A stretch of DNA of 64,000 nucleotides from Macrostomum lignano (GCA_002269645.1 NIVC01002100.1:124001-188000); one strand, 5' to 3'; positions 1-41,391 are shown, numbered from the stretch's first letter. The notes: a model not told the origin generated them from the sequence alone. Numbers and translations are program-made.

Positions 1-3000
1 CTGCTTGCAGCAGCAGTTGTACTCGAGCAGCAGTACGAATGCAAAGTACACAACACTTTCCACTACCATACAGAGCAGATATCGTCCTGTAGCATTCCAT
101 GCGCTCTGGTGCACGTCGAATCCCATAAACCGTTTTATTGGAGCAGATTTAAGTCTGGAATCTTTTAGAAGTGTGCCGAACCTGATTGAGACCTGATGGA
201 ACAAATTGTTATTATTACAGATTAGGTTACAATCCAAGAAATGCGAATATATAGCATTATATATATAGATATAATTAGCAATACATTATTCATGCGCATG
301 TCCTAACTGACTAAAGTGTTTTTGGCGTGAATTCTAAATTTTGGTCTGCGCAACTTACCTGATAGTAGACGTTTAACTCCATTAGTGATTGGCCCAAGCA
401 AAAGTGAGGCAGCGGTAGGAAAGCCATTTTCAGAATATCTGCAATGCGGAGAGCTGTGGTGTCATGGTTCTCTAGACCAACCAGTCGTACAATCGCGACG
501 GACATTGTTGTCGTGAACCCGATGCCCAGGTTCAGGCATGACAGCATGGTGAACGCCTTGCTCGGAACGGTCAGCACCCAGCTGAAGGGATACATGAGCG
601 GCGCACTGGCGAACCCGAACAGGACCACGGTCAGTAGGAACGGCACCAGGGACTCCTTTCCAATAAACTCGTAGCTTCTGAATGCAACGAAGATCAAAAT
701 AACGATGGTCAGCGGTACTATGTAGTTCAACAGGTTCCAGATGTGGTTCACGACCCAGTACATAGTCGGGTTGATTCCGGACACGAACTGCAAGTGCTTA
801 GCGTTTGTGGTTTTTTCCGAGATGAGGAAGATCACAAAGCTGGCGGGAATGAATGACAGGGCGAAGATGATGGACACCACTGTCATGGCCGATACCATGG
901 TGTTCGCGCTGAGCACGTTCTGTACGTATGTTGTACGAAAAGTGATCGGGTGAGTCCAGCCTGACACCCCGATCGCTTCTGCCGAGCCGACGCTCCGGTT
1001 GGCGAGAGTTCGCACGATAGAATTGGTGAGCGTATTTAGATATGCAGGGCCAGACAAGTAACCGTGATTGTCGTACCAGACTTGGTTTACAATTGCTTCG
1101 GAACTGCTCTGCTGACGAAAGCTTTTCAGTAGTGATAGCAGCTGCTCTAGGAAACTATAGTTGAAAAACAACACGGCGTGCCATTTATCTTATTTATCGA
1201 TATATTCTTATTTATCTATCTGATTAATCTATCTGTTTATTATCAAATAAACAAATATCATTGGGTTTTGTGACTTTTCAAGCAGGATTTTCAAATAAAT
1301 GTAGGCTTAAATTTACTGTTTAAGTAAACCGATGCTATTGGTCAACTAAAATATAAAATAATAATTGATATTGGAATAAACTATACAAGTAGCATACACA
1401 CCCATCCTTTCGTTTATCCTTCATGCTTGCTAAATTTTCCAGAACGTGCTGGGTTTCGACATTAGCATTGTCTTCGTCCGCATTAACTGGCTGCGAGTCG
1501 TTCACGAACAGCGTGTAGCCTCCGAACCTCTTTCGGTAGTACTCCATCACTGTCGACTGGATGTAGTTTGTCAGGTTGTAGCCCTGCATGCTCTCCACAA
1601 TGTCGGAGCTCATCAGAGACTTACGAGCTGGCGTTGGCCAGTCAACGCACTTGGCGCTGTTCGGGTAGTCCTTGTACGAGCACTGACACCACGATGTGTT
1701 GCTGGGCAGGTTGCTGGGAGTCTCAGACCACACAGAGCCTCGTCGCTGCGTCTTGCACGGGAAGTCGGGGTTGCTGAACACATCCTCTCGCATGCAGCGA
1801 GTTCCGAGGAAGTCCGTGCTGTTCATGTGCAGCATCAGCCGGTTGGACAGGTCGGTCAGGCTGTGGTTGTTTGGGTAGGCGGTCAGGCTGCGGCTCTGGA
1901 ACACTGATAGGTCCTTGAGGCGAGATCGCTCTGGCTTGCCGAGCATGTACCAGGGCGCCAGCTCCATCGGTGGACTGTCGCCGTCTTTGGGCACAATTTG
2001 CAGCAGAGCAAGGGTCAATAGGATAAAGACTGCAGGCAGCACAAACTCGGCGAGGAATCCGATCTTTGAGCGACGCAGAACGTAAAAGCGTTTGAACCAG
2101 AGCGCCTTGATCTGCTGCCACATCGGTCGGGTAGTCTGACGCAACCCTTTTAGAGCTGATAGATCTAATGTAGTATTTCTGGACGATAGACGAAGTTTTG
2201 AACTGGATAAAAGTTGCCTTTTTTCATTTAGCTTGCTTCCACCAATTGATTCTGGAATCTCCACGAGAGAGGATTTCGGTGTTTCTCCAACCCATTCTGA
2301 TTCGTAGCCAGTTACAGAGAGGAAGATCTCCTCAAGCGAGCTGTCCTCAATTCCATACGTTGCAATATGAAGATCTGTCATTCTTTTTTCCAAATTACCA
2401 AATAGAGAGGCCAACTTAGTCTCGGAAGTGTATGGCAGCTTTACGTTTATTTCACTGGAAGTACAATCTCCTAGAAAAGCATCTGGAACCTTGGACTGCA
2501 CCAAATCCAGTACTTTATCCGTGTCGCACTCTAAGGACGCCTTTACCAGAGTCAGGGTGTAGCCCTCACCAAACACCCTTTTTAGGAATGTAGGAGAGCC
2601 TGAGCACACGAGACGGCCTTTGTTAATGATGCAGATTCGGTCGCCCAGAATGTCCGCCTCGTCCATGTGGTGGGTAGTCAGGATGATGGTGCGGCCCTGA
2701 CGGAACTTCGCCAACACGTCCCAGATCGAGCGACGCGCGTGTGGGTCGACGCCTAAAATTCGCAGTTTTATTTTTGTCAAACGGATGTTGGCTGAAAGAA
2801 ATATCTTGTCGGTACAAAACCGCCGACTCACCAGCGGTTGGCTCGTCCAGTACGACGACCTTCGACCCGCCGACAAACGCCATGGCGACAGACAGCTTTC
2901 GCTTCATCCCGCCTGACAGATTCTTGCTTATTTCGTACTTCTTTTTCTGTAGGCCGACGTCTGCGATGAACGAGTCAACCTGCCGGGCGACCTCCGCCCT

Positions 3001-6000
3001 GCTGAGGCCTTTGAGCATGCCGTAGAAGTAGATGTGGTCCTCCACCGTCAGAGTGTCGAAAAGCACATTGTGCTGAGGACACAGGCCGAGTTGTTGGCGA
3101 ATCTGGTCCATCTCTGTGCGGATGTCGTACCCGCCGATAAAGGCGGTGCCCGATGTTGGTGTGTACAAACCCGTCAGAAGGGACATTGTAGTTGTTTTGC
3201 CTTAAATTAAGTGCATGCCCAAATATTTCATTTTGTTTTCAAAAATCAATTTGATTTTAAAAACTACTTTTTTAAATTTAGACTAAAATTTAGACTTTCC
3301 TCCATCATCACTTACCAGCACCATTGTGGCCCAAAAAAGACGTCACTTGACCTTCAAAAAAATTGTAGCTGAGGTTTTCTACGGCTGAGATCGTCTTTGC
3401 CTTTTGACAGGGCCAGTTTCTTGATGAAAATATCTTGGTCAAGTTTTTAATCGCAATGCCAACCGGAAGATATTTTGGCTCCGTTTCAAAATGCTCAGGA
3501 TTCAGATTATGAACAGTTTCGTCACTCAGTGGAAGTCCAGGACTCGATTCGTTTATGATTTGTTTATGGTCGATACACTCCTGAGCCTTGTCCTTCGATT
3601 TGCTGGTTAGTTTTTCTGGCTTGCTATATTTCCCGCACCAAAACGAGGGCTGGAATGGAAAGAACCATGGCTTGGGCACTCCGAACTCGCCGGGGAAAAC
3701 TTTCTCAAGGTACCAGGTCAACAGCATGAAAATTGCGGAGTCTATCCATAGCATTAGAATTACCTGAAAGAGCAATGACGGGCTCTGTAAGATTAATGCG
3801 CAAAAGCTAAGATTTGAAATCGGTTTTATCGCAATGAGACATTTTTTGACACCACACTATCCCTAGATCGTTATCCAGACTCAGCTTGAGGAAACGAGAT
3901 CTTGTGAAAACTATTCAAGTAGTTTTTTTATTTCAAACAGAAATGTTCTCACCAGGCCGAAGGACAGCTCTCCATTTGCGGCAGGAGAGTCAAAAAAGTT
4001 GTCATACTGCAACCCCACGGAAGCGAGCTCCCAATTGCTGATGAACTTGCAGCCGACTCCGAAAGCCAACTGGGGGATGAGGCAGCTCAGAATGTAGTGC
4101 GTCCGAGTCATGCTGTTGCCAAACGTTTCCAAAAGGTTGAAGGGTAGGTAGCCGGCGAAGTAGATCACTCTGGCAAAGGCAGCTGCTACGCTCGAGTTTG
4201 AGAAGAAAATTGACATGAAGAAGGCCTCAAAAATTGTGCTCACAACAAAAGACACGATGAAAAAGAACAGCAGAAGTGGGTTCGAGTAAATTATAATTTT
4301 TCCCATCGATAGCAGCAAGGTCATCAGGGCACTGGCGATAGACATGATGGCAAGAGAGGTGATGAACCAGGAGATCCAGTGCACTCCGTCAGACAGTCCC
4401 ATGATCTTCATCATCTCTTTCAGCCGCGTCTCTTTCTCGTAGACAATGGCGTTTACTAGCAGCGACACGTTGTAAATCCAGGATACAGTCATGAGCATAG
4501 GCAGGAAGGAGCCCATGGCGCTTATGAATTTGTCGTCAATGAAGCAGGCAGTGGGTAACATGGACATGTAGGTCTGGATCGGCGCGTCCACGCCAGAAAT
4601 TGCAGCCTGGATTCCCTGTTCCAACAGCTCCTGCAGGAGAGATCAGGTTTACCTTATCTTTATGGCGGAATTCTAGTAATGCATGTGAATGAATAATGTT
4701 GACAGCTACTTTATGCTTTTGGGTACGTTTCACGCCATTGCTTGGCTTCACTCGTTATATTGACGAGTCGATTGGAACTTATCTGATGGATCAGAACGGT
4801 AGCATTTCGTAAACTTTACTCACTACGAGCTATCAGCAAGTTCTCACCTGGATGTGCAGAAAAAATGAAGTGAAGTACTTGAAGTCTGTGGGAAACTTAG
4901 TCCTGGACGTCTCGGTGTACTTATCGTCGATGACATGAAAATACCGAGTGTCATCCACGTCATCCTCCGGAAAACGCAGCCGGTACTTCACGAAGCCAGA
5001 CGTCTGATTGTCGAACAGCAGGGACGCAATGAAAAGCGGCTTTTTAGCTTCGCTGTGCTGGCCGAACTCGTCGATGAGGTAGCGGGTGTAGTTTTCCAGA
5101 GTCTCCAGGCTGCCGAAGCCGGGCAGCTTGTTCAACCGGAAGCAGGCTGTCATGTAGTACAGCCGGCGCATCAGCGAGTTTGTCAACTTTATTAGACCAC
5201 GCCAGCTGCCGAAGCTGCCACCGGGGTCGGGCTTGGGCGCCAAGAATTTCAGCAGGCTGAGGCACATTTCGCCGTTCGACTTGCTGCCCAGAGTTCCGTG
5301 GCAAGCCAGCAATGCAGCCTGGGGTTTTCATTATGAATTGAAGAATGAGAAACTGCAGACTCACAGCCGCTACATCTTCGTGTTGGACCTCATGACTGTC
5401 TAATTCCCCCCCTCAGAGTCATCGAGTTCATGGAACCCTCTTCCGCTCTCCCAATCTCTGGTGTGCACTCACCCTGATCAGTCGCATCCGATTGCTTTTG
5501 CTCACAAACTCTTCGAGCTCGGGACTAAAGACCTGAGTGAAGCTCTCAGCCAGGTAGGACAGCCTGCTCATGCCTTGTAGAGTCCGGTTCAGCTGCAGGG
5601 TTTGGGTACGGAATTTTTATGACCATCAGCACAGTTATTAAAACATAATTCAACATCGAGTACGAAATACAATGCTCACTTTTTCGAGAAACTTGCGCGT
5701 CCTTGGGGTGTCCGGATAGAACGGGATGACGCCGAACATGACTTTGAGAATGCTGCCGAGCCCGATATCCGGCAGGACGTAGCGCAGCGATCCAAAAATG
5801 GCCGACTGAGAATTCCGATCGAGACAGACTGGGGAGTTTAAGCGGTATAGCCGGATGTCGCGCTTTGTTAATGCGTGTAGTTTCTTCTTTTTTTAACCGC
5901 TGCACAATGTTTACAAAGGTCTTCTAAATTTAAGTTCAAAGATGAACTTACGATAGGTTACTCTGCAATTCCTACTCTCTTTTAGACGATCTCTTATTAC

Positions 6001-9000
6001 AGAAAACGAGAGTAAAAACTACCGGAATGATTTACATTTGTTTGAATTCTTACATTTCTCAGGCGGAACAAACTGCTCTAGCAAATCAGCAGCTTGACCC
6101 TCCTGATTTTTCTGCTTTAGCTTTTTAGTATCGTTCCTCCTACTTTGCTGCGCTGCCGCCGCGGCCGCACCGACGTCTCTAGCCTTCCGGTGCAGCGCCC
6201 TGGCCGAGTCGTTGCCGTGTGTGCTGCCCTTCAGCGAGGCAAACTGCTCGACCGGCAGCGACATCAGCGGCTGCAGCTGCTTGCGCAAGCGTTTCGCCAC
6301 CTTGCTGAACACGGAGCGGCCGCTGCCGCACAGCACTCGGCTGAGCCGCAGAATCCCCCGCGTGGCCTGGTCCGAGTTGCCGCCGAGCCCGCCAGCCAGC
6401 GAGGCAGTCAAGTTCCACAACTCGTCGAGGGCGGCCAGTCGACCGTTGAGTTTCAAACTTTTCAGCTGCGGAGGAGCAGCGGTTGTTGGTATGGCCTTGG
6501 CTTTACATGTGCTTTTATGCGCACTGGTTCGCAAATACAAACTTCTGCTCAGTTCCAAGCGTACGCAGTGGCAGCACTGGATGACAACGACCTGTATTGT
6601 CTTTCGGTAAAAATTTCAGGTCGTCAGTGGAATTCAATTTCTACTCACCCCAGAAAGCAGCGTCTTCAAGTTAGTCAGGTCACTGAGTTCCAGTTCAATT
6701 AGATGTGGATTAGTTTCGGTGGAAACCATCTGGGTTGAGTAGCGAAATATCGATATCTGTATTATTTGTACTTCGTATATGTATTGTATACGTGTTATTT
6801 GTATCTATAACATATCTATAAGTTCAGCTTCTGGAACTCCATCTGTTCATTTCGTCTTACCTGATCCAGGGCGGCATCCATGTCGAACTGCGACTTCAAA
6901 TTTTCACGGAATTTTGCCTGTTCACAGAGTGTCGCCACAGTCAGCCATCCGTCATCGCCTCCGCCACCGCTGCCACAGACTACGGCTGGTAGCGTTTCCG
7001 TCATCCGCATCAGCGGCTCCAGCATCAGCCGTTCCACCGGGCCTGCAGACAAATGCCAGCGCTGTGGGTTTTGGGCACGAGTGAGGGGCTGCATTGTGCG
7101 GGGTTCGGGCACGAGTGAGGGCTGCATTGTGCGGGGTTCGGGCATGAGTGAGGGTTGCATTGTGCGGGGTTCGGGCATGAGTGAGGGTGCATTGTGCGGG
7201 GTTCGGGCATGAGTGAGGGCTGCATTGTGCGGGGTTCGGGCATGAGTGAGGATTGCATTGTGCGGGGTTCGGGCATGAGTGAGGATTGCATTGTGCGGGG
7301 TTCGGGCACGAGTGAGGGCTGCATTGTGCGGGGTTCGGGCACGAGTGAGGGCTGCATTGTGCGGGGTTCGGGCATGAGTGAGGATTGCATTGTGCGGGGT
7401 TCGGGCATGAGTGAGGGTTGCATTGTGCGGGGTTCGGGCATGAGTGAGGATTGCATTGTGCGGGGTTCGGGCATGAGTGAGGGTTGCATTGTGCGGGGTT
7501 CGGGCATGAGTGAGGGTTGCATTGTGCGGGGTTCGGGCATGAGTGAGGGTTGCATTGTGCGGGGTTCGGGCACGAGTGAGGGCTGCATTGTGCGGGGTTC
7601 GGGCATGAGTGAGGGTTGCATTGTGCGGGGTTCGGGCATGAGTGAGGGTTGCATTGTGCGGGGTTCGGGCATGAGTGAGGGTTGCATTGTGCGGGGTTCG
7701 GGCATGAGCGAGGATTGCATTGTGCGGGGTTTGGGCACGAGTGAGGGCTGCATTGTGCGGGGTTCGGGTATGAGTGAGGGTTGCATTGTGCGGGGTTCGG
7801 GTATGAGCGAGGGTTGCATTGTGCGGGGTTCGGGCATGAGCGAGGATTGCATTGTGCGGGGTTCGGGCACGAGTGAGGGCTGCATTGTGCGGGGTTTCGG
7901 GTAGAGGCAAAATGCAGACAGACCAGATGCTCACTTTTGGAAATCGAAATTCTGCCTTTGCAAAATCTTTTTTCTGCGCTTCCGTCGCGTCCACCCCGCT
8001 AAGCAGGGCCGTTGCGCCGCCGAACACCGAGCTGAGCTGTATAAGCTTCATGTCTGGGGAAACAAGGGAATGGATTTTCTCTGATCTTCTACTGTATTTA
8101 AACGTTAGTTTTCTGAGCACTCTCTTTGCTTCCACATAAGCTGTGTCGTTGCTCACTGCTCACCTGTGTCATTGGCACCGGCGGGCACGGCCATGACAGC
8201 CTTCGCAAACTTCCTGACCGTGGGGTTGGTCAGCACCAGGTTGGCTGCTCGCAACACCTGGGTTATGTTTCTGAACCTGGAATATGCAGGAATGAGGACA
8301 GACAGGTACACCAGCTAGATTGGGTCATGGAAACCCAGACCTAGAAATAGGAAAGGTTACGAGCTTTTGCTGACCCAACAGCAGCAGCCCGACCGGATCG
8401 GGGAGTCTTTGACACTAATAAATAGAATTGGAACTGCTGCTTCACCAGTTAAATTGGCTCATGTAGCTCGTAGTACTAGAGATTAATTAACTGGAATTGA
8501 AACGCCAATAAAGTTTGCCTTGCTGGCTCCTTACTCGGTGTCGTTGAACAGCCCCGCGTCCGAGCTGAAGTTCTGGTCGCCCTGCTGGCAGACGCCCAGG
8601 TGGCAGAAGGCCCGGAGCGCCGCCAGCGGCCCCTTCGAGGCCAGGGCGGCCGGCTTGAACTGGCAGGCCGACGAGGCGTGCCTGAAGTCGCGCGAGTGCC
8701 GGACAATCAGCAGGAGAAGGAATGACAGCAGCGGGGCCAAGATCTCTAGCGCTGTTGCGCCCTGGTGGGGTGAGAGAAGGAAGTGGGTGCTACTTCACAG
8801 CCGCAGCCCACTGAGCTACGGATTGCACTGAGCCCTGTGACTGAAAATCCTGTCAGAAGCACAGAAACTGAGCCCTGTGACTGGAAATCCAGTCAGAAGC
8901 ACAGAAACTGAGCCCTGTGACTGAAAATCCAGTCAGAAGCACAGAAACTGAGCCCTGTGACTGAAAATCCAGTCAGAAGCACAGAAACTGAGCCCTGTGA

Positions 9001-9636
9001 CTGAAAATCCAGTCAGAAGCACAGAAACTGAGCCCTGTGACTGAAAATCCTGTCAGAAGCACAGAAACTGAGCCCTGTGACTGAAAATCCAGTCAGAAGC
9101 ACAGAAACTGAGCCCTGTGACTGAAAATCCAGTCAGAAGCACAGAAACTGAGCCCTGTGACTGAAAATCCAGTCAGAAGCACAGAAACTGAGCCCTGTGA
9201 CTGGAAATCCAGTCAGAAGCACAGAAACTGAGCCCTGTGACTGAAAATCCAGTCAGAAGCACAGAAACTGAGCCCTGTGACTGAAAATCCAGTCAGAAGC
9301 ACAGAAACTGAGCCCTGTGACTGAAAATCCAGTCAGAAGCACAGAAACTGAGCCCTGTGACTGAAAATCCAGTCAGAAGCACAGAAACTGAGCCCTGTGA
9401 CTGAAAATCCAGTCAGAAGCACAGAAACTGAGCCCTGTGACTGAAAATCCAGTCAGAAGCACGGGAGCCCAAAAGTCAATCGTATTGCGATTTTCCTGAC
9501 CCCCAGTGGCACAATTGATGCCCTGGTCCTGCCTGGTGCTTTGTAAAGCGAGGCTCTAAAAACTTACAGGATTTCGCTGCTTCAGCTTGAAATTTTTCCA
9601 CTGCAGGATGTAGATCTTCTTGAGAAAGCCCAGCAT
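1..9636 (-). CDS. ABCA1-like: ABCA-subfamily full transporter, paralogue A (3' end runs off the window)
   Basis: Exons traced with GT/AG ends and consistent phases: 9636-9568 ([23 protein letters not shown]), 8761-8535, 8276-8164, 8053-7935, 7061-6861, 6729-6649, 6465-6054, 5828-5680, 5592-5473, 5318-4848, 4630-3953, 3763-3316, 3200-2832, 2752-1402, 1154-359, 192-<1. Sum 5796 nt, open frame. Motifs: N-terminal Lx[22 protein letters not shown]1 Walker A GHNGAGKTT, signature LSGGMKRKL, Walker B VVVLDEP, H-loop [11 protein letters not shown]2 KHLQFVSG. Confidence 0.93.
7075..7900. repeat. 33-bp minisatellite, about 25 copies, filling intron 4 of gene A
   Basis: Unit GAGTGAGGG(C/T)TGCATTGTGCGGGGTTCGGGCA(T/C); gives 11-aa periodic ORFs. 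Confidence 0.97.
8828..9462. repeat. 40-bp minisatellite, about 16 copies, intron 1 of gene A
   Basis: Unit CTGAGCCCTGTGACTGAAAATCCAGTCAGAAGCACAGAAA, nearly invariant. Confidence 0.97.
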
Positions 9637-15066: not shown

Positions 15067-15110
<44 letters not shown>

Positions 15111-25670: not shown

Positions 25671-26009
25671 TTGACTGTCTTAACTTTCTTGACCGTGTCA
25701 AATTCAGATGGCAATTGAAACCATTCGCAAATTCTTTTGAGGTGTTTGTTTGTTAAATGTCTAAATGTATTGCCTTAATCAAAAGATTCGATTTTTTATG
25801 CGTTTCTTAGATTTTGTTTATTTTTTTATTCAGATATTTCTGTGATATTAAATGCACATTCTGAGACCTGCAGTAGTTCTTCTTTTGCCAACCAATATAA
25901 ACCGCGATCAGCCACTTTCAAGGAAACCTCTGTCACAAGTTCTATTCCAAATTGTTGTGAAAATTTGAATTCAACTGATCTTTGTTCAAGCTCTTTTCGC
26001 TGAAGTTCA

Positions 26010-27480: not shown

Positions 27481-27925
27481 AAACTTGCAATATGAGACAC
27501 TTCGTACATGCACTACGTAAAGCATAAGTATTGATATACCGCATAGTAGACACTTGGACGGCAGAAGATGAACTCTACAATGCGACACAGTAACATATAT
27601 TTGTGAATCAATGCTGACAGAGCCGCTACAAAAGGACAGGAAAATAAAATTAATTTAGGAATGCAGCTGTTGTACTTCTACCTGCATGTTCTGCTTGCAT
27701 ACTAGTAGCTAAAAACATTCTGCATTTTTGAGCACCTACGGGCGTAAATAGAGGAACCAGCAGTGGAGTAAAATCTTATTGCTAGAGGGCTAAAACTGAC
27801 TTCATTTGACTTATCTGGCATGTACAGTGACTAAAAGCAACACTGAAACTTCGCGTCATATTTCATCATTTCACGCGCGAAAGATTTAAGCAGGAGAATT
27901 CCGACTGGAGTTGAATGTCCAGCCC

Positions 27926-30900: not shown

Positions 30901-33900
30901 AGCCGAGAAGTGATGGGGTGAGTCCAGCCGGACACGCCGATCTGGTCAGGCGAGCCGATGCTCTTGTTAGCCAGAGCCCTCATGATGACGTTGCTGAGGG
31001 TGTTGAGGTAGGCAGGCCCGGACACGTAGCCTCGGTTGTCGAACCAGACTTGGTTCACAATGGAGCTCAGATTTTCTTGTTGTCGACTGCTCTCCAGCCA
31101 ACTGTACAGCTGCTCCGTGCTCCTAATTGGGGATCAGATATTAGCGATTCGACTGACTGACTGACTGACTGACTGACTGACTGACTGACTGACTGACTGA
31201 CTGACTGACTGACTGACTGACTGACTGACTGACTGACTGACTGACTGACTGACTGACTGACTGACTGACTGACTGACTGACTGACTGACTGACTGACTGA
31301 CTGACTGACTGACTGACTGACTGACTGACTGACTGACTGACTGACTGACTGACTGACTGACTGACTGACTGACTGACTGACTGACTGACTGACTGACTGA
31401 CTGACTGACTGACTGACTGACTGACTGACTGACTGACTGACTGACTGACTGACTGACTGACTGACTGACTGACTGACTGACTGACTGACTGACTGACTGA
31501 CTGACTGACTGACTGACTGACTGACTGACTGACTGACTGACTGACTGACTGACTGACTGACTGACTGACTGACTGACTGACTGACTGACTGACTGACTGA
31601 CTGACTGACTGACTGACTGACTGACTGAATTAAAGGAGCCTACCTGTCAGAAGTATTGCTGCCAATGAGCGTGTCCATTTGCCTTAGCACCAACGAAGTC
31701 TCCTTTCCAGCGCGGGCCGCGTCTGCACTGACTGGCTGCGAGTCGTTCACGAACAGCGTGTAGCCTCCGAACCTCTTTCGGTAGTACTCCATCACTGTCG
31801 ACTGAATGTAGTTTGTCAGGTTGTAGCCCTGCATGCTCTCCACAATGTCGGAGCTCATCAGAGACTTCCGAGCTGGCGTTGGCCAGTCAACGCACTTGGC
31901 GCTGTTCGGGTAGTCCTTGTACGAGCACTGACACCACGATGTGTTGCTGGGCAGGTTGCTGGGAGTCTCAGACCACACAGAGCCTCGTCGCTGCGTCTTG
32001 CACGGGAAGTCGGGGTTGCTGAACACATCCTCTCGCATGCAGCGAGTTCCGAGGAAGTCCGTGCTGTTCATGTGCAGCATCAGCCGGTTGGACAGGTCGG
32101 TCAGGCTGTGGTTGTTTGGGTAGGCGGTCAGGCTGCGGCTCTGGAACACTGATAGGTCCTTGAGGCGAGATCGCTCTGGCTTGCCGAGCATGTACCAGGG
32201 CGCTAACTCCATCGGTGGATGTTCACCTACTTTAGGCACAATCTTGAGCAGAGCGAGGGCCAGGAGGATAAACATTGGAGGTAGCACAAACTCGGCGAGG
32301 AATCCGATCTTTGAGCGACGCATTACGTGGAAGCGCTTGAGCCAGAGCGCCTTGATTTGCTGCCACAAAGGCCGCCGCGTCCTTCGTACTTTCTGCTGAC
32401 TCTGAGACTCTGCTGATATATTTTCTCTTGAACTGCGGCTGCTCTCACCGCCTTCTGTATTGCTACTCATCGCTTGTTCCAAGTACCGCCGTCGTACACT
32501 TTCCCTATAAGACGGGCGAAACTCGACAACGGAGGAGTTACAGAGCAGTTCCTCTTTTTTTTGATCAGGCAGCCCAGTCACAGCGAGAAAAATCTCTTCG
32601 AGGGAGCTGTCCTCGATACCGTATGAAGAGATTCCCAGCTGTAGGTGAAGTTCGTCCAAAGTTTCAAACAGGTCAGCAAATAGAGGCACAGAGCTGTATG
32701 GCAGCCTGATGTTGATCTCACTGGATGTGCACTCAGCCAGATTTGCCTCTGGGACCTCAGACTGCACCGAATTCAGCACTAAATCAAGCTCGCAGTCTGG
32801 CGAAGCCTTCACCAGAGTCAGGGTGTAGCCCTCACCGAACTCTTTCTTCAGAAACATCGGAGAGCCTGAGCACACGAGACGGCCCTTGTTGATGACGCAG
32901 ATTCGGTCGCCCAGAATTTCCGCCTCGTCCATGTGGTGGGTGGTCAGGATGATGGTGCGGCCCTGACGATACTTTGCCAATACGTCCCAGATCGAGCGAC
33001 GTGCGTGGGGGTCCACGCCTGAAGTTAAATATAATGGAGTACAATGGAGAATTCAAGAATTGGATTCCAAACGCAGACATTTCATACTTTATGTCGAAGG
33101 AACGCTTCATCTGGTTCTGAGACGGTCTAAACCCACAAAGTTTTGTCAATACAAAAGACTTCAAGAAAAATGGCGTAGTATAATTAAGTCAACTCTATTG
33201 GTTAATTTAACGAAATTTTGCTGATTCTGATAATTAAACACAGACAAAAATTGTTGAACTTCATGGAAACAACATGAAGCGGCGGTATTATAGTTGCAGC
33301 ATATTCTGGTCAACAGGGCTCTCTCTTTTTCTCGCTTTGTAAGAGAGAAAAATGTCTTCAAATGTCACCCAGGCCACCCGCAGAGCTCACCGGCAGTTGG
33401 TTCGTCCAGAACAACGACTTTCGATCCGCCTATAAATGCCAGGGCAACAGACAGCCTTCGCTTCATCCCGCCTGACAGATTACCGCAAATCTCGTGTCTC
33501 TTTTTTTCGAGGCCCACATCGGCGGCCAAGAAGTCAATCTGTACGTTCAGCTCCGCCCTGCTGAGGCCCTTCAGCATGCCGTAGAAGTAGATGTGGTCCT
33601 CAACCGTCAGGGTGTCGAACAGCACATTGTACTGAGGACACAGGCCGAGGTGCCTGCGAATCTGGTCCATCTCTGTGCGGATGTCGTACCCGCCGATGAA
33701 GGCGGTGCCCGATGTCGGCAGAAACAATCCAGTGAGAATCGACATTGTCGTGCTTTTTCCTGTGGCCAAAAGGTTACGTAAACTTTAATAGATCTGAGTT
33801 TGAATCAGCATACGAAAATGAATATCGGGTTCAGCAGCAGCAGAGCTTCGAGAACTAAAATCAGATTTGTCAGCGGTGCAACTCACCGGCGCCGTTGTGA

Positions 33901-36900
33901 CCCAGAAAGGAGGTAATCTGATTTTCGAAGAAGTTGTAGCTGAGGTCGTCAACAGCAGTGAGAGGCTCGGTTTGTCTCCGGCAGGAGAAGCAACCCGGCC
34001 GGTAGATCTTCGACAAATTCCTAATCGCAACGCCCACTTCCAGGTTCGCGGGCTCGTCTTCGAATTGCTGCTTGCTGCTTTCATTGGAATCCACTGAGAC
34101 TGATTCTACTTTGCCATTGGAAAATGCCAGGCTGCTGTCACTGACACCATGTTTGCTTGTGTTCCCGAACCAGAAGGAGTGCAGGAAAGGAAAGTACCAC
34201 GGCTTCGGGACTCCGTACGGGCCGGGGAATAACTTTTCCAGGTACCAGGTGAGCAGCATTAGAATGGCGGAATCGACCCACAGCATCAGAATCACCTAAA
34301 TTCGTTTGAAGGCGAGTTGACAATACAGATAGAAATATTTGATTAGACAGAAATTATTCAGTGGGGGACTCTCAATCATAAATTTTTCATGACGCATAGT
34401 TTTAGTAGTATATTAAAATCAGTATGTACTGCATAAAGCTGTGCTAAAATATCCATAATTTTAGTCCCGCAAATCGGTCAAAGCAAAATCTTACCAAGAA
34501 AAATGACAGCTCCTCACTCCAGAGCGGCGCGCTGAAAAAGTTATTGGCCTGCAGTCCGATCACGGCCAGCTCCCAGTTGCTGATGATCTCGCTGCCAATG
34601 CCGAATGCAATCTGCGGAATCAGAAAGCTCACAATGAAGTGGGCTTGCCTCATGGTGCTGGTGAACTGTATGACCACCAGGTAGATCACGTAGCCGACAA
34701 TGTAGGCCACGGCTGCGACCGCGGCCGCTACGCTTGCGTTGGAGAAGAAGATCGATATGAAGAAGGCCTCACAAATCGTGCTGACCGCGAATGAGACGAT
34801 GAAAAGGAACAAAAGCCCAGGATTTGAGAGGCCGATTATTTGCCCAGCCTTCAGCATCACTGTTATCAGAGTGCCCGAAACCAGCATGATTGCAAATGAG
34901 GTGATGAACCAGGAGACCCAGTGCACTCCGTCGGACAGTCCCATAATCTTCATCATCTCTTTCAGCCGGGTCTCTTTCTCGTAGACAATGGCGTTCACCA
35001 GCACGGACACATTGAATATCCACGTGAAAATCAAGAGCATGGGTAAGAAAGCATTGGTGACTTTGGCGAAGGTGTCATCCATGTAGCACACTGATGGGAA
35101 CATTGTCAAGTAGGTCTGGAGCGGCGCGTTCACGCCTGTAACTTCTGCTTGAATTCCGTGTTCGAGCAGCTCCTGGTGTAAAATGAGAAAATTAAAAAGA
35201 ACTGCGAGTTAAAACAAGACGCGTCCCAGAGTCGTTGCAGGTCACACAGGTAAAATAGAAAAGAAGTGACTCTAAAACGAGCGACACAAGTGACTCTGGG
35301 GCGCTTCTATAATGATGGGCAGTAAAGTCGAACCTGAGGCGTGCAAGAGTCGCTGAAGAGTCACTGAATTGTGTCTAAAGCGCATCTGAGTCACTCTTTG
35401 AAATAAAAAAGTGCATTTCAGATTTTTAATAACTTTACGAGTGTACTTAGTCTGCTTGAGTTAGTAGAAAGGCCACCCCCAGGGATGGGCAAGCTGACCA
35501 CCCCGAACAACATCCGTGATCTTCGCGACTTGGTCCGAGATATCGGCCGGATGAAGGTCGCCGATGCCTCCTCTGTGAACCTGCCGACTACTTGCGGGGC
35601 TAAACCCTCGCACCAGGGTTAAACCTTCGTTTCATGTAAGTAAGTAAGGTAGAAAGTTAAGCGCTAACACAACGACTCTTATACTAATTTTGCGACTCTT
35701 TTACGATGTTACAGCTCCCGTGTTGCTCTCGTGACTCAACAGTGGCCTCTGCATTACAGTCGTTTAAGTACTCGCATTTTTAAAAGTCCCAACAGGTACC
35801 CCAGAGTCTCTAGAGTCACTAGTGAGTTGTTTACTATCACCCTTCATCGGTTCTTGTCACGGTTGCTTTTTCAGTGGGAGTAGCTGGTATGCAGTTTGAA
35901 ATCAGTAATCAATTTTTTCCAGTGAAAATATTTTTCTTGAATGACCTAATGGAAGAAAAGCTCACCTGAATGTATATGAAGAAAGATGTAAAGTACTTAA
36001 AATCGGTTTGAAAATTCGTTCGAGGCTTTGGTTTGAAATGGCTGTCCAATACTTTGAAGTGCCTGGTGCTGTCAATAGAGTTTTCTGGAAATCTTAAGCG
36101 GTACTTCACGAAGCCCGGCGCCAGCTTGTCGAAGAGCAGAGACGCAATGAACAGCGACTTGTTCACTTTCTTGTAGTCTTCCAGTTCGTCGATGAGGAAG
36201 CTGGTGCGGTTTTCCAGCGACTTCTCGGTGCTGAAGCCGCGAAGCTTGCTAAGGCGGAAACAGGCGGTGGCGAAGTACAGCCTGAGCATTAGTGTGTTCG
36301 TTGTATTCAGGGAGTCCTTCCATGTAGAGCTGGTATTCGACTGAGCGGAAGGCGGATCTGGCTGCAGAAACAGCTCCAGGTTCTTGCAGTTGCGACCGTT
36401 GGGCTGCCCGGCGTAGTAAATTTGGCAGTGACTCAGCAGTGTCTGAATGTGTGAAACGAAGGCATACGCATCGAATGCAGACACGCAGTACAACCATATA
36501 GTATAAGGCAGCCCAGGCTCACGGGCTAAGGTCTGCGGTACTACACACGGTCCCTCTCTGTTTTGGTGTAAGAATGGGTAGAGAACCTTCCTCCATGCTG
36601 ATTCACAAGCCGGTCTAGGGGTTCGCCTCCAGCATATGCTTAATGAGGCTGGACTGACAGGGCTCCAGTGGGGGGCAACCCATCCGTGGCCTTGACTTTT
36701 GATTTGGTCATGTTGGGTACGCGGGTTCTCCTGGAAGTGTACCTTTGCGTATCAGGTGCCTCTGGCTACGGATCTAAGGGACTGGTGTTGCCTTTTGAAT
36801 TTAACAGGGTATGCGGCCAGCCCACCAGCCTCTGGAGACAGCCTCTTTGTCTATCAAGAGCCCAGTGTAGCACCGCACTGATGGTCTTTTGGCTCAGCCT

Positions 36901-39900
36901 CTTACCAGGTTCTTAACTGAGGAGTTTCTCAGTTGCTAGCCAAGAAGAAACGCAAAAGCAAGCAGGAAAGCCAAGTCCGACAAGTGTCACCAATACTGCA
37001 CGGAGCTGGAGGGCGCTACTTCACGCGTGGTCAAGACCCTCACTCTTGACGAGATGTCAAAGCTCTTAGTTCTCAAAAGATCAGGTGTATTACCCTCCAG
37101 TACGTGCCCAAGGCCCGGAAAGAGGCTACGATTGTTTTCATTTCCAAAGCTGGGAAGGGAGACTGTGAGTGCATCACTCTGCCAAAGCCTACCGCCCCAT
37201 CAGTCTGACGTCCCTCGTACTCAACCAGAATGCTGTTCGATCTGGATGTTTCATCGAAAGCGCTGCACGCCATTGCCGACAAGCTCATGTTAATGTGCCG
37301 TTTGAAACCTTTAGATGAGGCTTAGCTATGTGCGCAACTTATGAAATTTCCACCGTGGAAAACTTTGAGGTTGGGAAAGAATATGAAATTTCGAGCTTAT
37401 GAAACACCCGGCCCCCCTCCCGCCGAGGGTTTGCGGAATGAGCGGTGATGATTCCGCTCATGATGCATCCGGATGCCCAAAGACCCCTGCAGCTGATTCA
37501 AACTTAATATACGCAAAGAATCTTTGCTGTTTCAGAGGCAGCCAAGTCAGCGCAATGCCCAAACCGTTCAAAACACCCGAAACAAAATCGCACCAACCCG
37601 CATATTCGCCATCTCGCTGCTGTTGGTGATGAAGTTGGCGATGCGAGGACTCGTTGACTTCACGAAGTTCTCCGCTATGTAGGATGCCCAGGACGCTGCA
37701 ATAAGGGTCTCGTTCAGCTGGAGTGTTGAATTGTAGGTGTAAAGATGCTTGCATTGTTTTCAACTCTCAAAATTCAGTTTGTTTGCTTCATCGGCTTACT
37801 TTCTTGAGAAACTTTCGCGTCCTTTCTGATTCAGGATAGTAAAGGATTTCTCCGAACATGAGCCGTTTGAGGCCGGAGAACCCGAGCTTGTCGAGCAGCC
37901 AGTCAGGAAGCAGCAGGATGGCATTCTGATAGCGCTTGTCTGAGCAAACTGCGGGTGAGAAACGTCCTCTCTCTTCTTGCATTCAAAATTTAAAACTCTT
38001 TACTGCACAGTGAAGAGATCAGATAAAAATGGCACAAATATTTTTGATTTCCAACTCTAGAAGATAAAATCAGGTGATAGTTGAATGTCTTGATGATACT
38101 GACTGTGAGCAACACGACAATGAAAAGTCGCCACTCTATGCGCCAGTGAGCAATTTCTCTTGGACTATTCTGAAATAAAATATACGAGAAAACTGATCGG
38201 GGCAGCTTTAATCCGTCCAATCCTCGCACAACGCTCCCCCCCCTACTTCATTTCTCAACTTAAGTCTGCCGCGGCGTAGCTAAGATGCCTCACCTGCTAA
38301 GATTGAGACTTTACCTGCCCTCATAAAAGTGGCGACCACAGACAGAATCTTCTGTGATGGCGAAATTTTGATGTTGCTGAGTATCAATAGAAGATGCAAG
38401 TTGAGATAATTCTTGGGCTGCAGGAACACCCAAAGTGCTCCGAAAGCATATAAAAAACGTGAATTCTGAGGACTGCATTAGAAAACAAGGTGCTCACACT
38501 CCTCTGGAGGCACAATGGTTGTCAGATTGACTGTCTTCTCTGAATCGTTTGTCGATTTCTCGATTAATTCGTTTGGCTCGAAGTCTTCGGCTACGTCTTC
38601 GACCATCTCGCGGTCCAGGTAGTCCGACAGGACGTTCTTGCCGGAGCCGCAGACATGGCCGGCTAAGATCTTTACAGACCGCAGCCAGCCCTTCAGTCTG
38701 CTGCTCGACAGGCCTTCAGTCACATTCACGGCGAGGTCGCGCATCTTTCTAAACACGAGCAGCGTTCCATCGTTGCTCATCTCGTTAATCTGCGGGATAT
38801 TTTAATTCAACGTAATGTACGAAAGAAGAGCCTCGTAAGAGCGTGTGTTGTGCTGTCAGATCTACCATGATATCTATTTCAATTTGCCAATCTTCAACCA
38901 TGGAGCTTACCTGAGAAAGAAGCATCTGCAGACTCTTGAGGTCACTGGGGTTGAGCAGAACGCTGCGCTTGTTGCTGTCTGTAGAGGCCATCTTTTAATG
39001 AAAATGATTGGGTTGGAGTTGGAGTCACAAGGCTTAATTTGCTGCTAAGCTCTTTAACGCATAGGTAACCTCTAGTCTCTGGAAAGCACAGCTCTAGACA
39101 GGTGTCAAGAACTCCATCTCTCTCACCTGGGCCCGAACCGCGTCAAAATCCAGCTGAGACCGGAGGTTTTCGCGGAACCGCGGCTGCTTGCAGAGCTCCC
39201 GCACTGCCCGGGTCCAGTTGGCGGTGGCGCCGGCCCCGCTGCACAGGATATTGGGCAGCCCGCTCTGCGACAGCATCAGGCCAGCCATGCCGGGGCCCAT
39301 GGACAGGTCCAAGAGCTGCAATGGGTGATGTCTAATTGTACAAAATTCTAACACGGAGTCCCGTAGGAAGTGGTGAGCATGTCCTAAGACTTTATCCGTA
39401 CAGCTCATAGTTAATACTTAATAGTTAATATTTCATTGTTCTCAGTTCAGAGGCACATTCAGGCAGTGAAATTCAGCTAATTTTATTCCACTTTACCTTG
39501 GGAAACGGCACTTCCGCCGTCTCGAAAGACGCTCTCTGCTCCTTTGTTACCTTGACGCCATCGAACAGCGCGCTGCCGTTGTTTTTGAAAAGCGAGCGGA
39601 GTTTGATCTTCTTCATCTCTGCAATGTCATGACCCATTTTCATGCAGGGACGGGTGATTGCAGGGATAGGAGAGAGCAGGGATAGGAGAGTGCAGGGACA
39701 GGAAAGAGCAGGGATAGGAGAGTGCAGGGACAGGAGAGAGCAGGGACAGGAGAGAGCAGGGACAGAAGAGTGCAGGGACAGGAGAGTGCAGGGACAGGAG
39801 AGAGCAAGGACAGGAGAGTGCAGGGACAGGAGAGAGCAGGGACAGGAGAGAGCAGGGACAGGAGAGAGCAAGGACAGAAGATTGCAGGGACAGGAGAGTG

Positions 39901-41391
39901 CAGGGACAGGAGAGAGCAGGGACAGGAGAGAGCAGGGACAGGAGAGAGCAGGGACAGGAGAGAGCAGGGACAGGAGAGAGCAGGGACAGGAGAGAGCAGG
40001 GACAGGAGAGAGCAGGGACAGGAGAGAGCAGGGACAGGAGAGAGCAGGGACAGGAGTGAGCAGGGACAGGAGAGAGCAAGGACAGAAGATTGCAGGGACA
40101 GGAGAGAGCAGGGACAGGAGAGTGCAGGGACAGGAGAGAGCAGGGACAGGAGAGTGCAGGGACAGCTCAGCTCAGCTCACTTGTGGGGTCGGACAGGGCA
40201 GGGCGCGTGGCCGAGGCGGCGAGTGACAGCTTCTTGATGGTGTTGTGGTTCAGCCAGAAGTTGATCGCGCCCATCACCCGCGATATGTTTCTGAAACTGG
40301 AACGAAGCGAATAATAAAATTAGCTGGAACTTTTCGCATTGACCAAGGAGAGATCTCACCCCTCGTCAGTCACGAGGTCTTGGTCTGTGTGGAAGGTCTG
40401 GGCTCCCTCTCGACAAACTCCCAGGTGACAGAAGGACCTGAGCACCGCACCCAGGCCGCTCGAAGCCAAGGGGGACGGTTTGAACTGGCAGGCCGACGAT
40501 CTCTGAAAGAAGTCCTGCGACTGCCGGATGCCGATGAGGATGGAGATGATCACCAGCGGAGCGAGCAGCTCCATCAAAGTGGAGATCTGCAGAGTTTGAG
40601 CGGCGGTGTTGGATGATTCAGCGCTGAATTCGGGGCAGCCTCATCACTGCGAATCGGGGCAGCCTCATCACTGCGAATCGGGGCAGCCTCATCACTGCGA
40701 ATCGGGGCAGCCTCATCACTGCGAATCGGGACAGCCTCATCACTGCAATTCAGGACAGCCTCATCACTGCGAATCGGGACAGCCTCATCACTGCGAATCG
40801 GGACAGCCTCCTCATTGCGAATCAGGACAGCCTCATCACTGCGAATCGGGACAGCCTCCTCATTGCGAATCAGGACAGCCTCATCACTGCGAATCGGGAC
40901 AGCCTCCTCATTGCGAATCAGGACAGCCTCATCACTGCGAATCGGGACAGCCTCATCACTGCAATTCTGGCTGGTTAAGGAGGCCGTAGCCCAGTGGTCA
41001 AGTGCGGCGCTCTTATGTGCCAGCGGCCCAGGCTCAACTCTTATTGAACATAAGAGCTCAAGTGCAGTCACATTAATTTGGGGCTCGGTTGGAATAACGG
41101 CTTGGGACTACTTGTGCAATCAACGCAATTGAGGGCAAACCTCCGAGGCACAGCCTAACGATAAACGAAGTTAGGGCCGCTGTACACTCCTGCCTGTGTG
41201 CCTGTGTGTATGACTGCGTACGTATCCGCGCTTGTGCGCCTGCTCAGGGGGATTTCAGGAAGTAGAAATGTAAAACCAATGAAACCAGCGCGTCACAAGC
41301 GTTGCACACCGCGCGGACTTACCGGCCGTCTCTGCTTCAGCTTGATGTCCTTCCACAGCAGCACGCAGATCTGCTCACAGGCAGTCACCAT
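27926..41391 (-). CDS. ABCA1-like: ABCA-subfamily full transporter, paralogue C (2274 aa)
   Basis: Exons: 41391-41323 ([23 protein letters not shown]), 40586-40360, 40296-40181, 39618-39497, 39315-39127, 38991-38911, 38789-38498, 37948-37800, 37717-37598, 36442-35966, 35172-34495, 34295-33887, 33759-33391, 33018-31644, 31122-30327, 29707-29215, 29099-28889, 28747-28489, 28399-28052, 27970-27926 ([14 protein letters not shown]). Sum 6825 nt, open frame, both NBDs intact. Confidence 0.93.
31151..31628. repeat. (GACT)n microsatellite, about 119 perfect copies, intron 14 of gene C
   Basis: Uninterrupted gactgact... between exons 33018-31644 and 31122-30327. Confidence 0.98.
35472..35648 (+). mobile_element. 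5'-truncated non-LTR retroelement fragment with (GTAA)n tail
   Basis: Flanked by direct repeat GTAGAAAG (35464-35471 and 35649-35656) and ends in GTAAGTAAGTAAG. Short tandem-repeat tails are typical of RTE-type LINEs; the clade assignment is inference. Confidence 0.55.
39657..40165. repeat. 16-bp purine-rich minisatellite, about 32 copies, filling intron 3 of gene C
   Basis: Unit GCAGGGACAGGAGAG(A/T). Confidence 0.97.
40625..40968. repeat. 24-bp minisatellite, about 14 copies, intron 1 of gene C
   Basis: Unit CACTGCGAATCGGG(G/A)CAGCCTCAT. Confidence 0.96.

What the first reader, a model, noticed from the sequence alone, without database searches (positions are those of the whole stretch)
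1..41391. Three inverted ABCA paralogues form a mosaic: ATPase and ECD2 modules homogenised, ECD1 strongly diverged
Seen: exons 1-12 of A, B and C keep the same intron positions and phases but have clearly different proteins and unrelated introns (exon 6: [27 protein letters not shown] / [27 protein letters not shown] / [27 protein letters not shown]). Downstream, sharply bounded blocks are almost nucleotide-identical, and the identical pair changes by block: NBD1 A=B, ECD2 A=B=C, ECD2/TMD2 start B=C, NBD2 B=C and probably A. One duplication history cannot produce this. Established knowledge: ectopic gene conversion acts between clustered or inverted paralogues, and the ABCA1 ECD1 carries a lipid-binding tunnel. 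Inference: conversion keeps a shared engine while the extracellular specificity module diversifies, a modular concerted-evolution system for a lipid-exporter cluster.
Basis: partly seen in the sequence, partly recalled or inferred. Interest (0 to 1): 0.8.

Follow-up and report, generated by a model that had tools for sequence, protein, structure and literature searches.

The report
Gene-conversion mosaic in three ABCA genes
Three old, neighbouring copies of an ABCA1-like lipid-transporter gene have recently copied short stretches of DNA onto one another in their 3' 40%, while the 5' part that encodes the first extracellular domain has diverged too far to be overwritten; it is a very clean new example of a well-known process, not a new kind of system.

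Summary
The window carries three 20-exon ABCA1/4/7-like genes: A (minus strand, cut off by the window start), B (plus) and C (minus). A and B lie head-to-head; B and C lie tail-to-tail. All 19 intron positions and phases match.

- **Old background:** exons 1-10 share 45-50% amino-acid identity, synonymous sites are saturated, and 15 of 19 introns show no similarity.
- **Recent tracts from exon 13 on:** sharply bounded tracts are 98-100% identical, introns included.
  - A=B across most of NBD1 plus intron 13.
  - A=B=C across the N-terminal part of ECD2 (335 nt perfect in all three).
  - B=C in two short tracts in ECD2/TMD2.
  - B=C over 1,555 nt with one mismatch, running through NBD2 and introns 16-18.
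- **Incongruence:** site patterns flip between blocks (93:1:5, then 1:0:43). Permutation gives P<1/2000.

Repeated ectopic gene conversion between inverted neighbours is the best explanation.
- Tract edges do not follow that division. ECD2 is homogenised, while TMD1 and the start of NBD1 are not.
- ECD1 exons now share at most 20 identical bases in a row, so they are passively out of reach.

Assembly collapse is unlikely but cannot be tested without reads. I file this as a new member of a known kind.

The parts
1..9636 (-). Gene A: ABCA1-like full transporter. Exons 1-16 are visible; the 3' end is cut off by the window start (at least 1932 aa).
   Evidence: Gene model and translation with no stops, canonical GT-AG at every junction. 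Walker A, signature and Walker B motifs of NBD1 are present.
11319..23142 (+). Gene B: complete ABCA1-like full transporter, 20 exons, 2366 aa.
   Evidence: Gene model. Pfam: ABC_tran x2, ABC2_membrane_3 x2, R1_ABCA1. Best solved relatives are ABCA1 (1288 bits), ABCA4 and ABCA7.
27926..41391 (-). Gene C: complete ABCA1-like full transporter, 20 exons, 2274 aa.
   Evidence: Gene model. Both NBD motif sets are present.
9637..11318 (.). A/B head-to-head spacer between the two start codons, AT-rich (GC about 0.37).
23143..27925 (.). B/C tail-to-tail spacer, holding a 40-bp (24695-25669) and a 16-bp (26007-27445) minisatellite.
4848..9636 (-). A exons 1-10 (TM1 + ECD1): the old, unconverted part. 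Counterparts are B 11319-16861 and C 35966-41391.
   Evidence: ECD1 amino-acid identity 45-50%, pS about 0.65 (saturated). Introns unrelated. Longest shared exact string is at most 20 nt.
4360..4516 (-). Older A-B tract in exon 11 (TMD1), equal to B 17115-17271; 94.9% A-B against 83% for either with C.
2629..3200 (-). Tract 1, A copy: exon 13, intron 13 and the start of exon 14 (NBD1 after Walker A).
   Evidence: 98.4% identical to B 18381-18950. Site patterns AB|C 93, AC|B 1, BC|A 5. Exon 13 dS is 0.029 for A-B against 0.54-0.59 with C.
18381..18950 (+). Tract 1, B copy.
   Evidence: As for the A copy. Intron 13 is 96% identical over 79/76 nt and differs by one indel.
1486..2121 (-). Tract 2, A copy: TM7 plus the N-terminal two-thirds of ECD2 (exon 14).
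   Evidence: 481-nt perfect run with B 19618-20098. A 1958-1624 is perfect with both B and C.
19580..20215 (+). Tract 2, B copy. From 19743 onward all three genes are identical (468 of 473 columns).
31731..32203 (-). Tract 2, C copy (the three-way identical part).
20463..20626 (+). Tract 3, B copy: C-terminal part of ECD2 (start of exon 15), equal to C 31073-30910.
   Evidence: 98.8% B-C against 73% with A. BC|A 43, AB|C 1.
30910..31073 (-). Tract 3, C copy.
20815..20940 (+). Tract 4, B copy: within TMD2, equal to C 30721-30596.
   Evidence: 98.4% B-C. BC|A 25, AB|C 0.
30596..30721 (-). Tract 4, C copy.
21390..22944 (+). Tract 5, B arm: exon 16 (part), introns 16-18 and exons 17-19 (NBD2 + R2).
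   Evidence: 1 mismatch in 1555 nt against C 29613-28059. Introns are 100% identical. It ends within 7 nt of the exon 19 donor site.
28059..29613 (-). Tract 5, C arm. With the B arm it forms an inverted repeat around a 5.1-kb spacer.
1..57 (-). Last visible 57 nt of A exon 16, where A becomes nearly identical to B and C.
   Evidence: 54/57 identical to B and 55/57 to C, after 81-82% over the whole 101-nt block b11. This is too short to show that A shares the NBD2 tract.

Best explanation
Three ancient ABCA1/4/7-like paralogues sit next to each other in alternating orientation (A minus, B plus, C minus). They repeatedly exchange short stretches of DNA (about 80-1,600 bp) by non-allelic (ectopic) gene conversion.

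**Shown:**
- The genes are old. Synonymous sites are saturated, introns are unalignable, and site patterns in the unconverted parts are star-like.
- At least five tracts are very young (98.4-100% identical). They include introns, and adjacent tracts support incompatible pairings.
- There are also older tracts at 86-95% identity.
- Pair-specific tracts are found only between the inverted neighbours A/B and B/C. None is found between A and C, the direct-repeat pair about 30 kb apart.

**Inferred:**
- Conversion is confined to stretches that still have enough uninterrupted identity to start recombination. It therefore sustains itself where it already acts.
- The ECD1 exons, the R1 linker and the middle of ECD2 drifted past that threshold long ago and now evolve independently.
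- Heterologous introns (12, 14, 15, 19) act as barriers that set several tract edges.

On this reading the mosaic is a by-product of homology-dependent repair between inverted repeats. It need not be a selected design.
For: - **Gene models:** identical intron positions and phases in all three genes.
- **Per-exon NG86:**
  - dS is about 0.6 to not computable in exons 1-12.
  - dS is 0.029 for A-B in exon 13.
  - dS is 0-0.012 for B-C in exons 17-19.
- **Control for protein constraint:** the last 30 codons of exon 12 are 80-87% identical in amino acids but only 30-53% identical at third positions. Protein conservation therefore does not produce silent-site identity here.
- **Introns:** 13 (A/B) and 16-18 (B/C) are 96-100% identical. 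The other 15 introns give no hit.
- **Perfect runs:** 481 nt (A-B), 335 nt (all three) and 1487 nt (B-C).
- **Block site patterns:** 93:1:5, then 1:0:43 and 0:1:25. Unconverted blocks give roughly equal thirds.
- **Permutation:** P<1/2000 for A-B and B-C; not significant for A-C (P=0.17).
- **Graded ages:** tract identities of 100, 99, 95, 92 and 86%.
- **No substrate in ECD1:** the longest exact shared string in exons 1-10 is at most 20 nt, against 205-481 nt in converted exons.
Against: - No reads, no second assembly and no orthologues could be found. Donor, recipient and non-reciprocity are therefore not shown, and assembly effects are not excluded.
- The N-terminal part of ECD2, identical in all three genes, is only weakly conserved against human ABCA1. 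[quoted passage not shown] is thus not the whole story; self-perpetuation or selection must be added.
- TMD1 is well conserved (A-B nucleotide identity 77%, with a 56-nt exact match) yet carries only an old tract.
- No clear GC-biased conversion signature was found.
Confidence: 0.75

Rival explanations
1. Selected modular concerted evolution. Conversion is favoured in the ATPase, membrane and ECD2 parts because a common engine is advantageous. Selection removes conversions that touch ECD1, so three transporters keep different extracellular specificities.
For: - ECD1 is the least similar large domain (45-50% amino-acid identity). ECD2 is 80-86% and NBD2 is 100% for B-C.
- The homogenised N-terminal part of ECD2 is not a strongly conserved region family-wide, so something other than constraint keeps it uniform.
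- A review argues that ABCA diversification is ECD1-driven on a conserved TMD-NBD engine (PMC13161189).
- All three genes are intact.
Against: - Tract edges do not match an engine/specificity split. TMD1, the start of NBD1, R1 and parts of TMD2 are unconverted, while extracellular ECD2 is converted.
- ECD1 and ECD2 co-fold as one unit.
- pN/pS in ECD1 is about 0.55 with saturated pS, so there is no sign of positive selection.
- ECD1 exons share at most 20 nt of uninterrupted identity, so no present-day selection against conversion is needed.
Confidence: 0.15
2. Assembly or polishing artefact. The identical tracts are a shared consensus (a collapsed graph node threaded into two or three places, or short-read polishing across paralogues). 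The real copies differ more.
For: - Several tracts are exactly identical (335, 481 and 1487 nt), which is what a shared consensus would give.
- No reads or independent sequence could be consulted.
Against: - The contig runs through 12.3 kb of a 23-bp satellite and about 15 minisatellites. That points to long reads, which would span tracts of 0.1-1.6 kb together with unique flanks (inference).
- Tracts have graded identity (86-99%) and scattered single differences, not all-or-none.
- Flanks are unalignable. Mis-mapping could at most raise about 97% to 100%; it could not create shared introns 13 and 16-18.
- Edges fall at biologically sensible places such as intron boundaries.
Confidence: 0.07
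3. No DNA exchange. Either a recent duplication was followed by very fast divergence of the 5' part, or strong purifying selection on protein or RNA keeps the 3' blocks identical.
For: NBDs are the most conserved parts of any ABC transporter (NBD1 is close to human ABCA1 in the alignment).
Against: - Silent sites and 15 of 19 introns are saturated or unrelated, so the genes are old.
- Identity in the tracts includes introns and all third positions.
- Conserved protein stretches outside the tracts have saturated third positions.
- Adjacent blocks support incompatible pairings.
Confidence: 0.03

Closest known systems
Interlocus gene conversion with sharply bounded tracts in duplicated genes (classic case: human gamma-globin HBG1/HBG2; also RHD/RHCE, CYP21A2/CYP21A1P, red/green opsins).
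   Same: - Old duplicates.
- A discrete stretch is near-identical, introns included, next to diverged flanks.
- Tract edges fall at heterologous or simple-sequence DNA.
   Different: - Three genes rather than two.
- At least five young tracts with changing partners.
- Inverted rather than tandem orientation.
- Background divergence is far greater: silent sites are saturated.
Arm-to-arm gene conversion in palindromes (human Y-chromosome ampliconic palindromes). From my own knowledge.
   Same: The B and C 3' ends form an inverted repeat (1555 nt, 1 mismatch) around a 5.1-kb unique spacer. Inverted orientation allows conversion without deletion of the intervening DNA.
   Different: - The arms are only 1.6 kb, against 9 kb to 1.45 Mb.
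- They are the ends of two otherwise very different genes.
- Further tracts lie 10-19 kb apart.
Domain-restricted conversion or exchange in receptor families (primate Siglec-11/16 paired receptors; plant NLR clusters). From my own knowledge.
   Same: Only part of a multidomain gene is homogenised, while another part stays distinct.
   Different: In those cases the pattern has been tied to selection on ligand-binding domains. Here no selection test is possible, and the converted set mixes cytosolic, membrane and extracellular parts.
ABCA1/ABCA4/ABCA7 group of ABCA lipid transporters
   Same: - Same domain order: TM1-ECD1-TMD1-NBD1-R1-TM7-ECD2-TMD2-NBD2-R2.
- Best solved-structure matches are ABCA1 (1288 bits), ABCA4 and ABCA7.
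- Large ECD1.
   Different: - The organism is unknown and has no close relative in the searched protein collections.
- The N-terminal half of ECD1 is not alignable to human ABCA1.
- No function has been tested.
Gene conversion or concerted evolution reported in other ABC transporter families (bird ABCG2/ABCG2-like, PMC7362505; human ABC pseudogene paper, PMC2329642). Both were found by text search only and not read.
   Same: They are papers on ABC transporter paralogues or pseudogenes in which the term "gene conversion" occurs.
   Different: I found no paper describing conversion among ABCA1-like paralogues.

Membership tests
ABCA subfamily full transporter (ABCA1/4/7-like) | Two ABC ATPase domains with Walker A, signature and Walker B motifs | tested here: met
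   Pfam ABC_tran x2, E=1.1e-58. GHNGAGK / LSGGMKR / [10 protein letters not shown] and GVNGAGK / YSGGNKRK / [10 protein letters not shown] are present in B and C. The NBD1 set is present in A.
ABCA subfamily full transporter (ABCA1/4/7-like) | Two ABC-2-type membrane domains, each with a large extracellular domain between its first two helices, plus ABCA-type regulatory domains | tested here: met
   ABC2_membrane_3 x2 and R1_ABCA1. Near full-length alignment to ABCA1 in five stretches, including the C-terminal half of ECD1 and ECD2; the N-terminal half of ECD1 is not alignable.
ABCA subfamily full transporter (ABCA1/4/7-like) | Closest relatives are ABCA1, ABCA4 and ABCA7 rather than ABCA3 or the ABCA5 group | tested here: met
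   1288, 1210 and 1121 bits against 943 for ABCA3. No phylogeny was built.
ABCA subfamily full transporter (ABCA1/4/7-like) | Lipid export or flipping activity | not testable with these tools
   Needs expression and transport assays.
Interlocus (ectopic) gene conversion / partial concerted evolution | Discrete tracts much more similar than their flanks, beyond chance | tested here: met
   Sliding window and perfect runs. Permutation P<1/2000 for A-B and B-C.
Interlocus (ectopic) gene conversion / partial concerted evolution | Similarity extends to silent sites and introns (a DNA-level event, not protein constraint) | tested here: met
   dS is 0-0.03 in tracts against about 0.6 to not computable elsewhere. 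Introns 13 and 16-18 are 96-100% identical.
Interlocus (ectopic) gene conversion / partial concerted evolution | Incompatible groupings in adjacent segments | tested here: met
   AB|C: AC|B: BC|A = 93:1:5, then 1:0:43 and 0:1:25.
Interlocus (ectopic) gene conversion / partial concerted evolution | Non-reciprocal transfer with identified donor and recipient; tracts group by species when compared with orthologues | not testable with these tools
   No orthologues or related genomes were found.
Interlocus (ectopic) gene conversion / partial concerted evolution | Tracts are real in the genome, not an assembly consensus | not testable with these tools
   No reads are available. Indirect arguments only.
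Selection-maintained mosaic (a specificity domain protected from conversion) | Evidence of diversifying or positive selection in the unconverted domain | tested here: inconclusive
   ECD1 pN 0.35-0.38 and pS about 0.65 (saturated). With three sequences and no outgroup, no valid dN/dS test is possible.
Selection-maintained mosaic (a specificity domain protected from conversion) | Converted versus unconverted boundary coincides with functional module boundaries | tested here: not met
   ECD2 is largely converted. TMD1, the start of NBD1, R1 and parts of TMD2 are not.
Palindrome arm-to-arm conversion | Inverted arms with more than 99.9% identity around a unique spacer | tested here: met
   B 21390-22944 against C 29613-28059, 1 mismatch in 1555 nt, 5.1-kb spacer. 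The arms are much shorter than in known palindromes.

The most novel reading that the evidence does not exclude
The cluster could be a selected cassette arrangement. Conversion between inverted neighbours would keep one common ECD2/NBD/TMD2 chassis, and purifying selection against ECD1 conversions would preserve three different extracellular heads that must all co-fold with the same ECD2. That would be a natural domain-swap experiment for how ABCA1-like transporters choose lipids or acceptors.
Probability: 0.15. Interest if true: 0.6.

Novelty: new member of a known kind. Interest (0 to 1): 0.4.

Why it matters
**For molecular evolution.** This is an unusually clean case. Saturated and zero silent-site divergence lie side by side within one gene. 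At least five young tracts involve changing partners. Exchange is seen only between inverted neighbours. That makes it a useful test bed for tract length, homology thresholds and intron barriers.

**For ABCA biology.** It offers three natural chimeras, with different ECD1 on a nearly identical N-terminal part of ECD2 and, for B and C, an identical NBD2. These could be used to ask what ECD1 contributes.

**For annotation and phylogenetics.** Whole-gene trees of such clusters will be wrong, because domains must be analysed separately. Short-read mapping to the identical tracts will also be ambiguous.

Tried and rejected
**Organism and orthologues.** Three protein searches found nothing closer than 30-39% identity over long stretches, or nothing at all:
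- A exon 14.
- B, C-terminal ECD1 plus TMD1.
- A transposase-like ORF downstream.

The taxon therefore stays unidentified. It looks metazoan, given the ABCA1/4/7-type ECDs and a THAP-domain ORF.

**GC-biased conversion.**
- GC3 is high everywhere, at 0.6-0.9.
- Converted introns 16-18 are somewhat GC-richer than other short introns, but that is only three introns.
- The strong/weak asymmetry in B=C tracts (46:18) is confounded by gene A being AT-richer everywhere (122:73 in unconverted blocks).
- Result: inconclusive.

**Minisatellites as coding repeats.** The 33-bp and 30-bp arrays in A and B lie in open frames, but they sit inside intron 4. The junctions are canonical GT-AG, and in C the frame requires the intron.

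**Automatic frame choice from paralogue HSPs.** This failed inside the near-identical tracts because all frames match. I fixed it with external ABCA proteins.

**Literature.** Searches for ABCA-specific gene conversion found nothing pertinent.

**RNA genes.** Rfam and tRNA scans of the window were empty.


Full report
**What is there**

The window is eukaryotic. A self-comparison shows three related stretches in alternating orientation, plus many tandem repeats. I built gene models in three steps:
- stop-free segments were compared between the copies;
- frames inside near-identical parts were fixed with external ABCA proteins;
- GT-AG junctions that keep the frame were enumerated and compared across the three copies.

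All three models are open and use canonical splice sites:
- A: minus strand, ATG at 9636, cut in exon 16 by the window start, at least 1932 aa.
- B: plus strand, 11319-23142, 2366 aa.
- C: minus strand, 41391-27926, 2274 aa.

A and B lie head-to-head, with 1.7 kb between the start codons. B and C lie tail-to-tail, with a 4.8-kb spacer. Every shared intron lies at the same codon position and phase.

Protein B has two ABC_tran domains, two ABC2_membrane_3 domains and an ABCA1-type regulatory domain. Its best solved relatives are ABCA1 (1288 bits), ABCA4 and ABCA7. These are ABCA1-like full transporters. Lipid export is inferred from family membership and was not tested.

**The observation**

Exons 1-12 are old:
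- Amino-acid identity is 28-74%.
- pS is 0.43-0.86, so dS is about 0.6 to not computable.
- At domain level, ECD1 is 45-50% identical, with pS about 0.65 and pN 0.35-0.38.

Of the 19 introns, only intron 13 (A/B, 96%) and introns 16-18 (B/C, 100%) give any similarity, even with 7-base words. Where no tract is present, site patterns are close to equal thirds. Exons 1-10 give AB 296, AC 260 and BC 254, so the three genes separated long ago and at about the same time.

From exon 13 on, a genomic three-way alignment shows the mosaic:

| Tract | B coordinates | Content | Identity | Site patterns AB\|C : AC\|B : BC\|A |
|---|---|---|---|---|
| 1 | 18381-18950 | exon 13, intron 13, start of exon 14 (NBD1 after Walker A) | A=B 98.4%; C 82-83% | 93:1:5 |
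| 2 | 19580-20215 | TM7 and N-terminal two-thirds of ECD2 | A=B, 481-nt perfect run; from 19743 all three identical (468/473 columns, 335 nt perfect) | nearly invariant |
| 3 | 20463-20626 | C-terminal part of ECD2 | B=C 98.8% | 1:0:43 |
| 4 | 20815-20940 | within TMD2 | B=C 98.4% | 0:1:25 |
| 5 | 21390-22944 (= C 29613-28059) | exon 16 (part) to exon 19, introns 16-18 (NBD2, R2) | B=C, 1 mismatch in 1555 nt | A is cut off at B 21490; 0:1:18 over the 101 nt still shared |

Further points:
- Between tracts 3 and 4, and after tract 4, A and B are the closer pair at 86% and 92%. These look like older events.
- Exon 11 (TMD1) also has an older A-B tract of 156 nt at 94.9%.
- Identity drops to 40-60% within 30-60 nt at tract edges.
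- Several edges coincide with unrelated introns: tract 1 starts at the intron 12/exon 13 junction, and tract 5 ends within 7 nt of the exon 19 donor.
- Permuting the 2273 variable sites gives longest agreeing runs of 28 (A-B) and 18 (B-C) against a null maximum of 13 (P<1/2000). A-C has none (P=0.17).

- Exon 11 is not free of exchange.
- The first strand of NBD1 (exon 12) is not homogenised.
- The middle of ECD2, around intron 14, is hypervariable.
- The claim that A shares the NBD2 tract rests on the last 57 nt of the window only (54/57 and 55/57 identical).

**Why this is DNA exchange and not constraint or a young duplication**
- Identity inside tracts includes all third positions and whole introns.
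- A conserved protein stretch just outside tract 1 serves as a control. The last 30 codons of exon 12 are 80-87% identical in amino acids but only 30-53% identical at third positions. Selection on the protein therefore does not produce silent identity in these genes.
- A young duplication is excluded by saturated silent sites and unrelated introns in the same genes.
- No single tree can give 93:1:5 in one block and 1:0:43 two blocks later.
- At least five recent events are needed, plus several older ones (identities of 86, 92 and 95%).

**How it most likely works**

*Shown.* Tracts are short (82-1555 nt). Pair-specific tracts occur only between inverted neighbours, so B is the hub. The ages of the tracts are graded.

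*Inferred.* This is ectopic gene conversion during repair between inverted repeats, where crossing-over would invert rather than delete the intervening DNA.

Exons 1-10 now share at most 20 identical bases in a row, against 205-481 in converted exons. From general knowledge of homologous recombination, 20 bases is far below what efficient exchange needs. ECD1 is therefore out of reach today without any protection.

Conversion is self-sustaining where it already acts. This would explain why the N-terminal part of ECD2 stays uniform even though it is only weakly conserved against human ABCA1.

The gene-conversion part is well supported. The "shared engine versus diversifying specificity module" part is not shown:
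- The converted set includes most of extracellular ECD2. It omits TMD1, the start of NBD1, R1 and parts of TMD2.
- ECD1 and ECD2 co-fold into one base-tunnel-stalk body, so the tunnel is not a property of ECD1 alone (PMC13161189).
- The same review does argue that ABCA diversification is ECD1-driven on a conserved engine, so the idea is reasonable at family level.
- With three sequences, saturated silent sites and no outgroup, selection on ECD1 cannot be tested here.

I give the adaptive reading about 0.15.

**Artefact?**

I cannot see reads. Four points argue against collapse:
- The contig runs through a 12.3-kb satellite and many minisatellites. That suggests long reads, which would span these tracts together with unique flanks.
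- Tract identities are graded and carry scattered single differences.
- The flanks are unalignable, so mis-mapping could at most polish about 97% to 100%. It could not create shared introns.
- The exact figure of 100% may be inflated, but the mosaic itself is very unlikely to be an artefact (about 0.07).

**What led nowhere**
- Identifying the organism or finding orthologues.
- A GC-biased conversion signature.
- ABCA-specific literature on gene conversion.
- RNA genes in the window.

**Verdict**

This is a real and very clean case of partial concerted evolution by interlocus gene conversion among three ancient ABCA1-like paralogues. The process is well known, and the example is new for this family as far as I could find. 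I classify it as a new member of a known kind, with interest 0.4.

Noticed in passing
window 51683-64000: 12.3 kb of a 23-bp AT-rich satellite (consensus TGACGCTTCTATGATTTTTTACA, about 545 copies, 94% matches) running to the end of the window.
   Followed up: no
window 7066-7901, 8827-9462, 12601-13502, 13905-14410, 39644-40165, 40630-40962, 24695-25669, 26007-27445, 42939-43139, 43818-44831, 46750-47035: Very high density of unrelated minisatellites (periods 15-43 bp). Several fill introns 1-4 of the three ABCA genes at different positions in each copy. None lies in a converted tract.
   Followed up: partly
window 7062-7934 (gene A intron 4): This 873-nt intron, mostly a 33-bp (11-codon) minisatellite, is stop-free and in frame with exons 4 and 5 (one open frame 8159-6819). 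Retention would insert 291 residues into ECD1. In B and C the equivalent intron is not in frame.
   Followed up: partly
window 31151-31628 (gene C intron 14): A perfect (GACT)n microsatellite of 478 bp, 100% matches and no indels.
   Followed up: no
window 47223-48790, minus strand: A THAP zinc-finger ORF (48551-48790, Pfam THAP E=2e-13) is followed by ORFs that look like remnants of a P-element/THAP9-type transposase. A second THAP-like start (MGYRCAAINC...) lies at 43523. The THAP9 resemblance comes from memory of the motif only. Pfam gave no hit for the downstream ORFs, and a protein search found nothing.
   Followed up: partly
window 15080-15140 (gene B exon 7): B's ECD1 carries a run of 13 glycines followed by SSGSSGSS, which is absent from A and C. 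A has its own low-complexity insert (AAAAAAQQ, lysine-rich) in the same exon.
   Followed up: no
window 23032-23142 versus 27926-27970: The last exon differs between B and C. The 1.56-kb identical arm stops at the exon 19 donor. B then has a 36-residue tail after VFINFAKNQ, and C only 5 residues. B's tail contains a possible further donor (AAAAGTAAGT), so its true end is uncertain.
   Followed up: partly
window 36443-37597 (gene C intron 9) and 11693-13556 (gene B intron 2): These two introns are unusually long (1155 and 1864 nt, against 80-250 nt typical). I did not examine the content of C intron 9.
   Followed up: no
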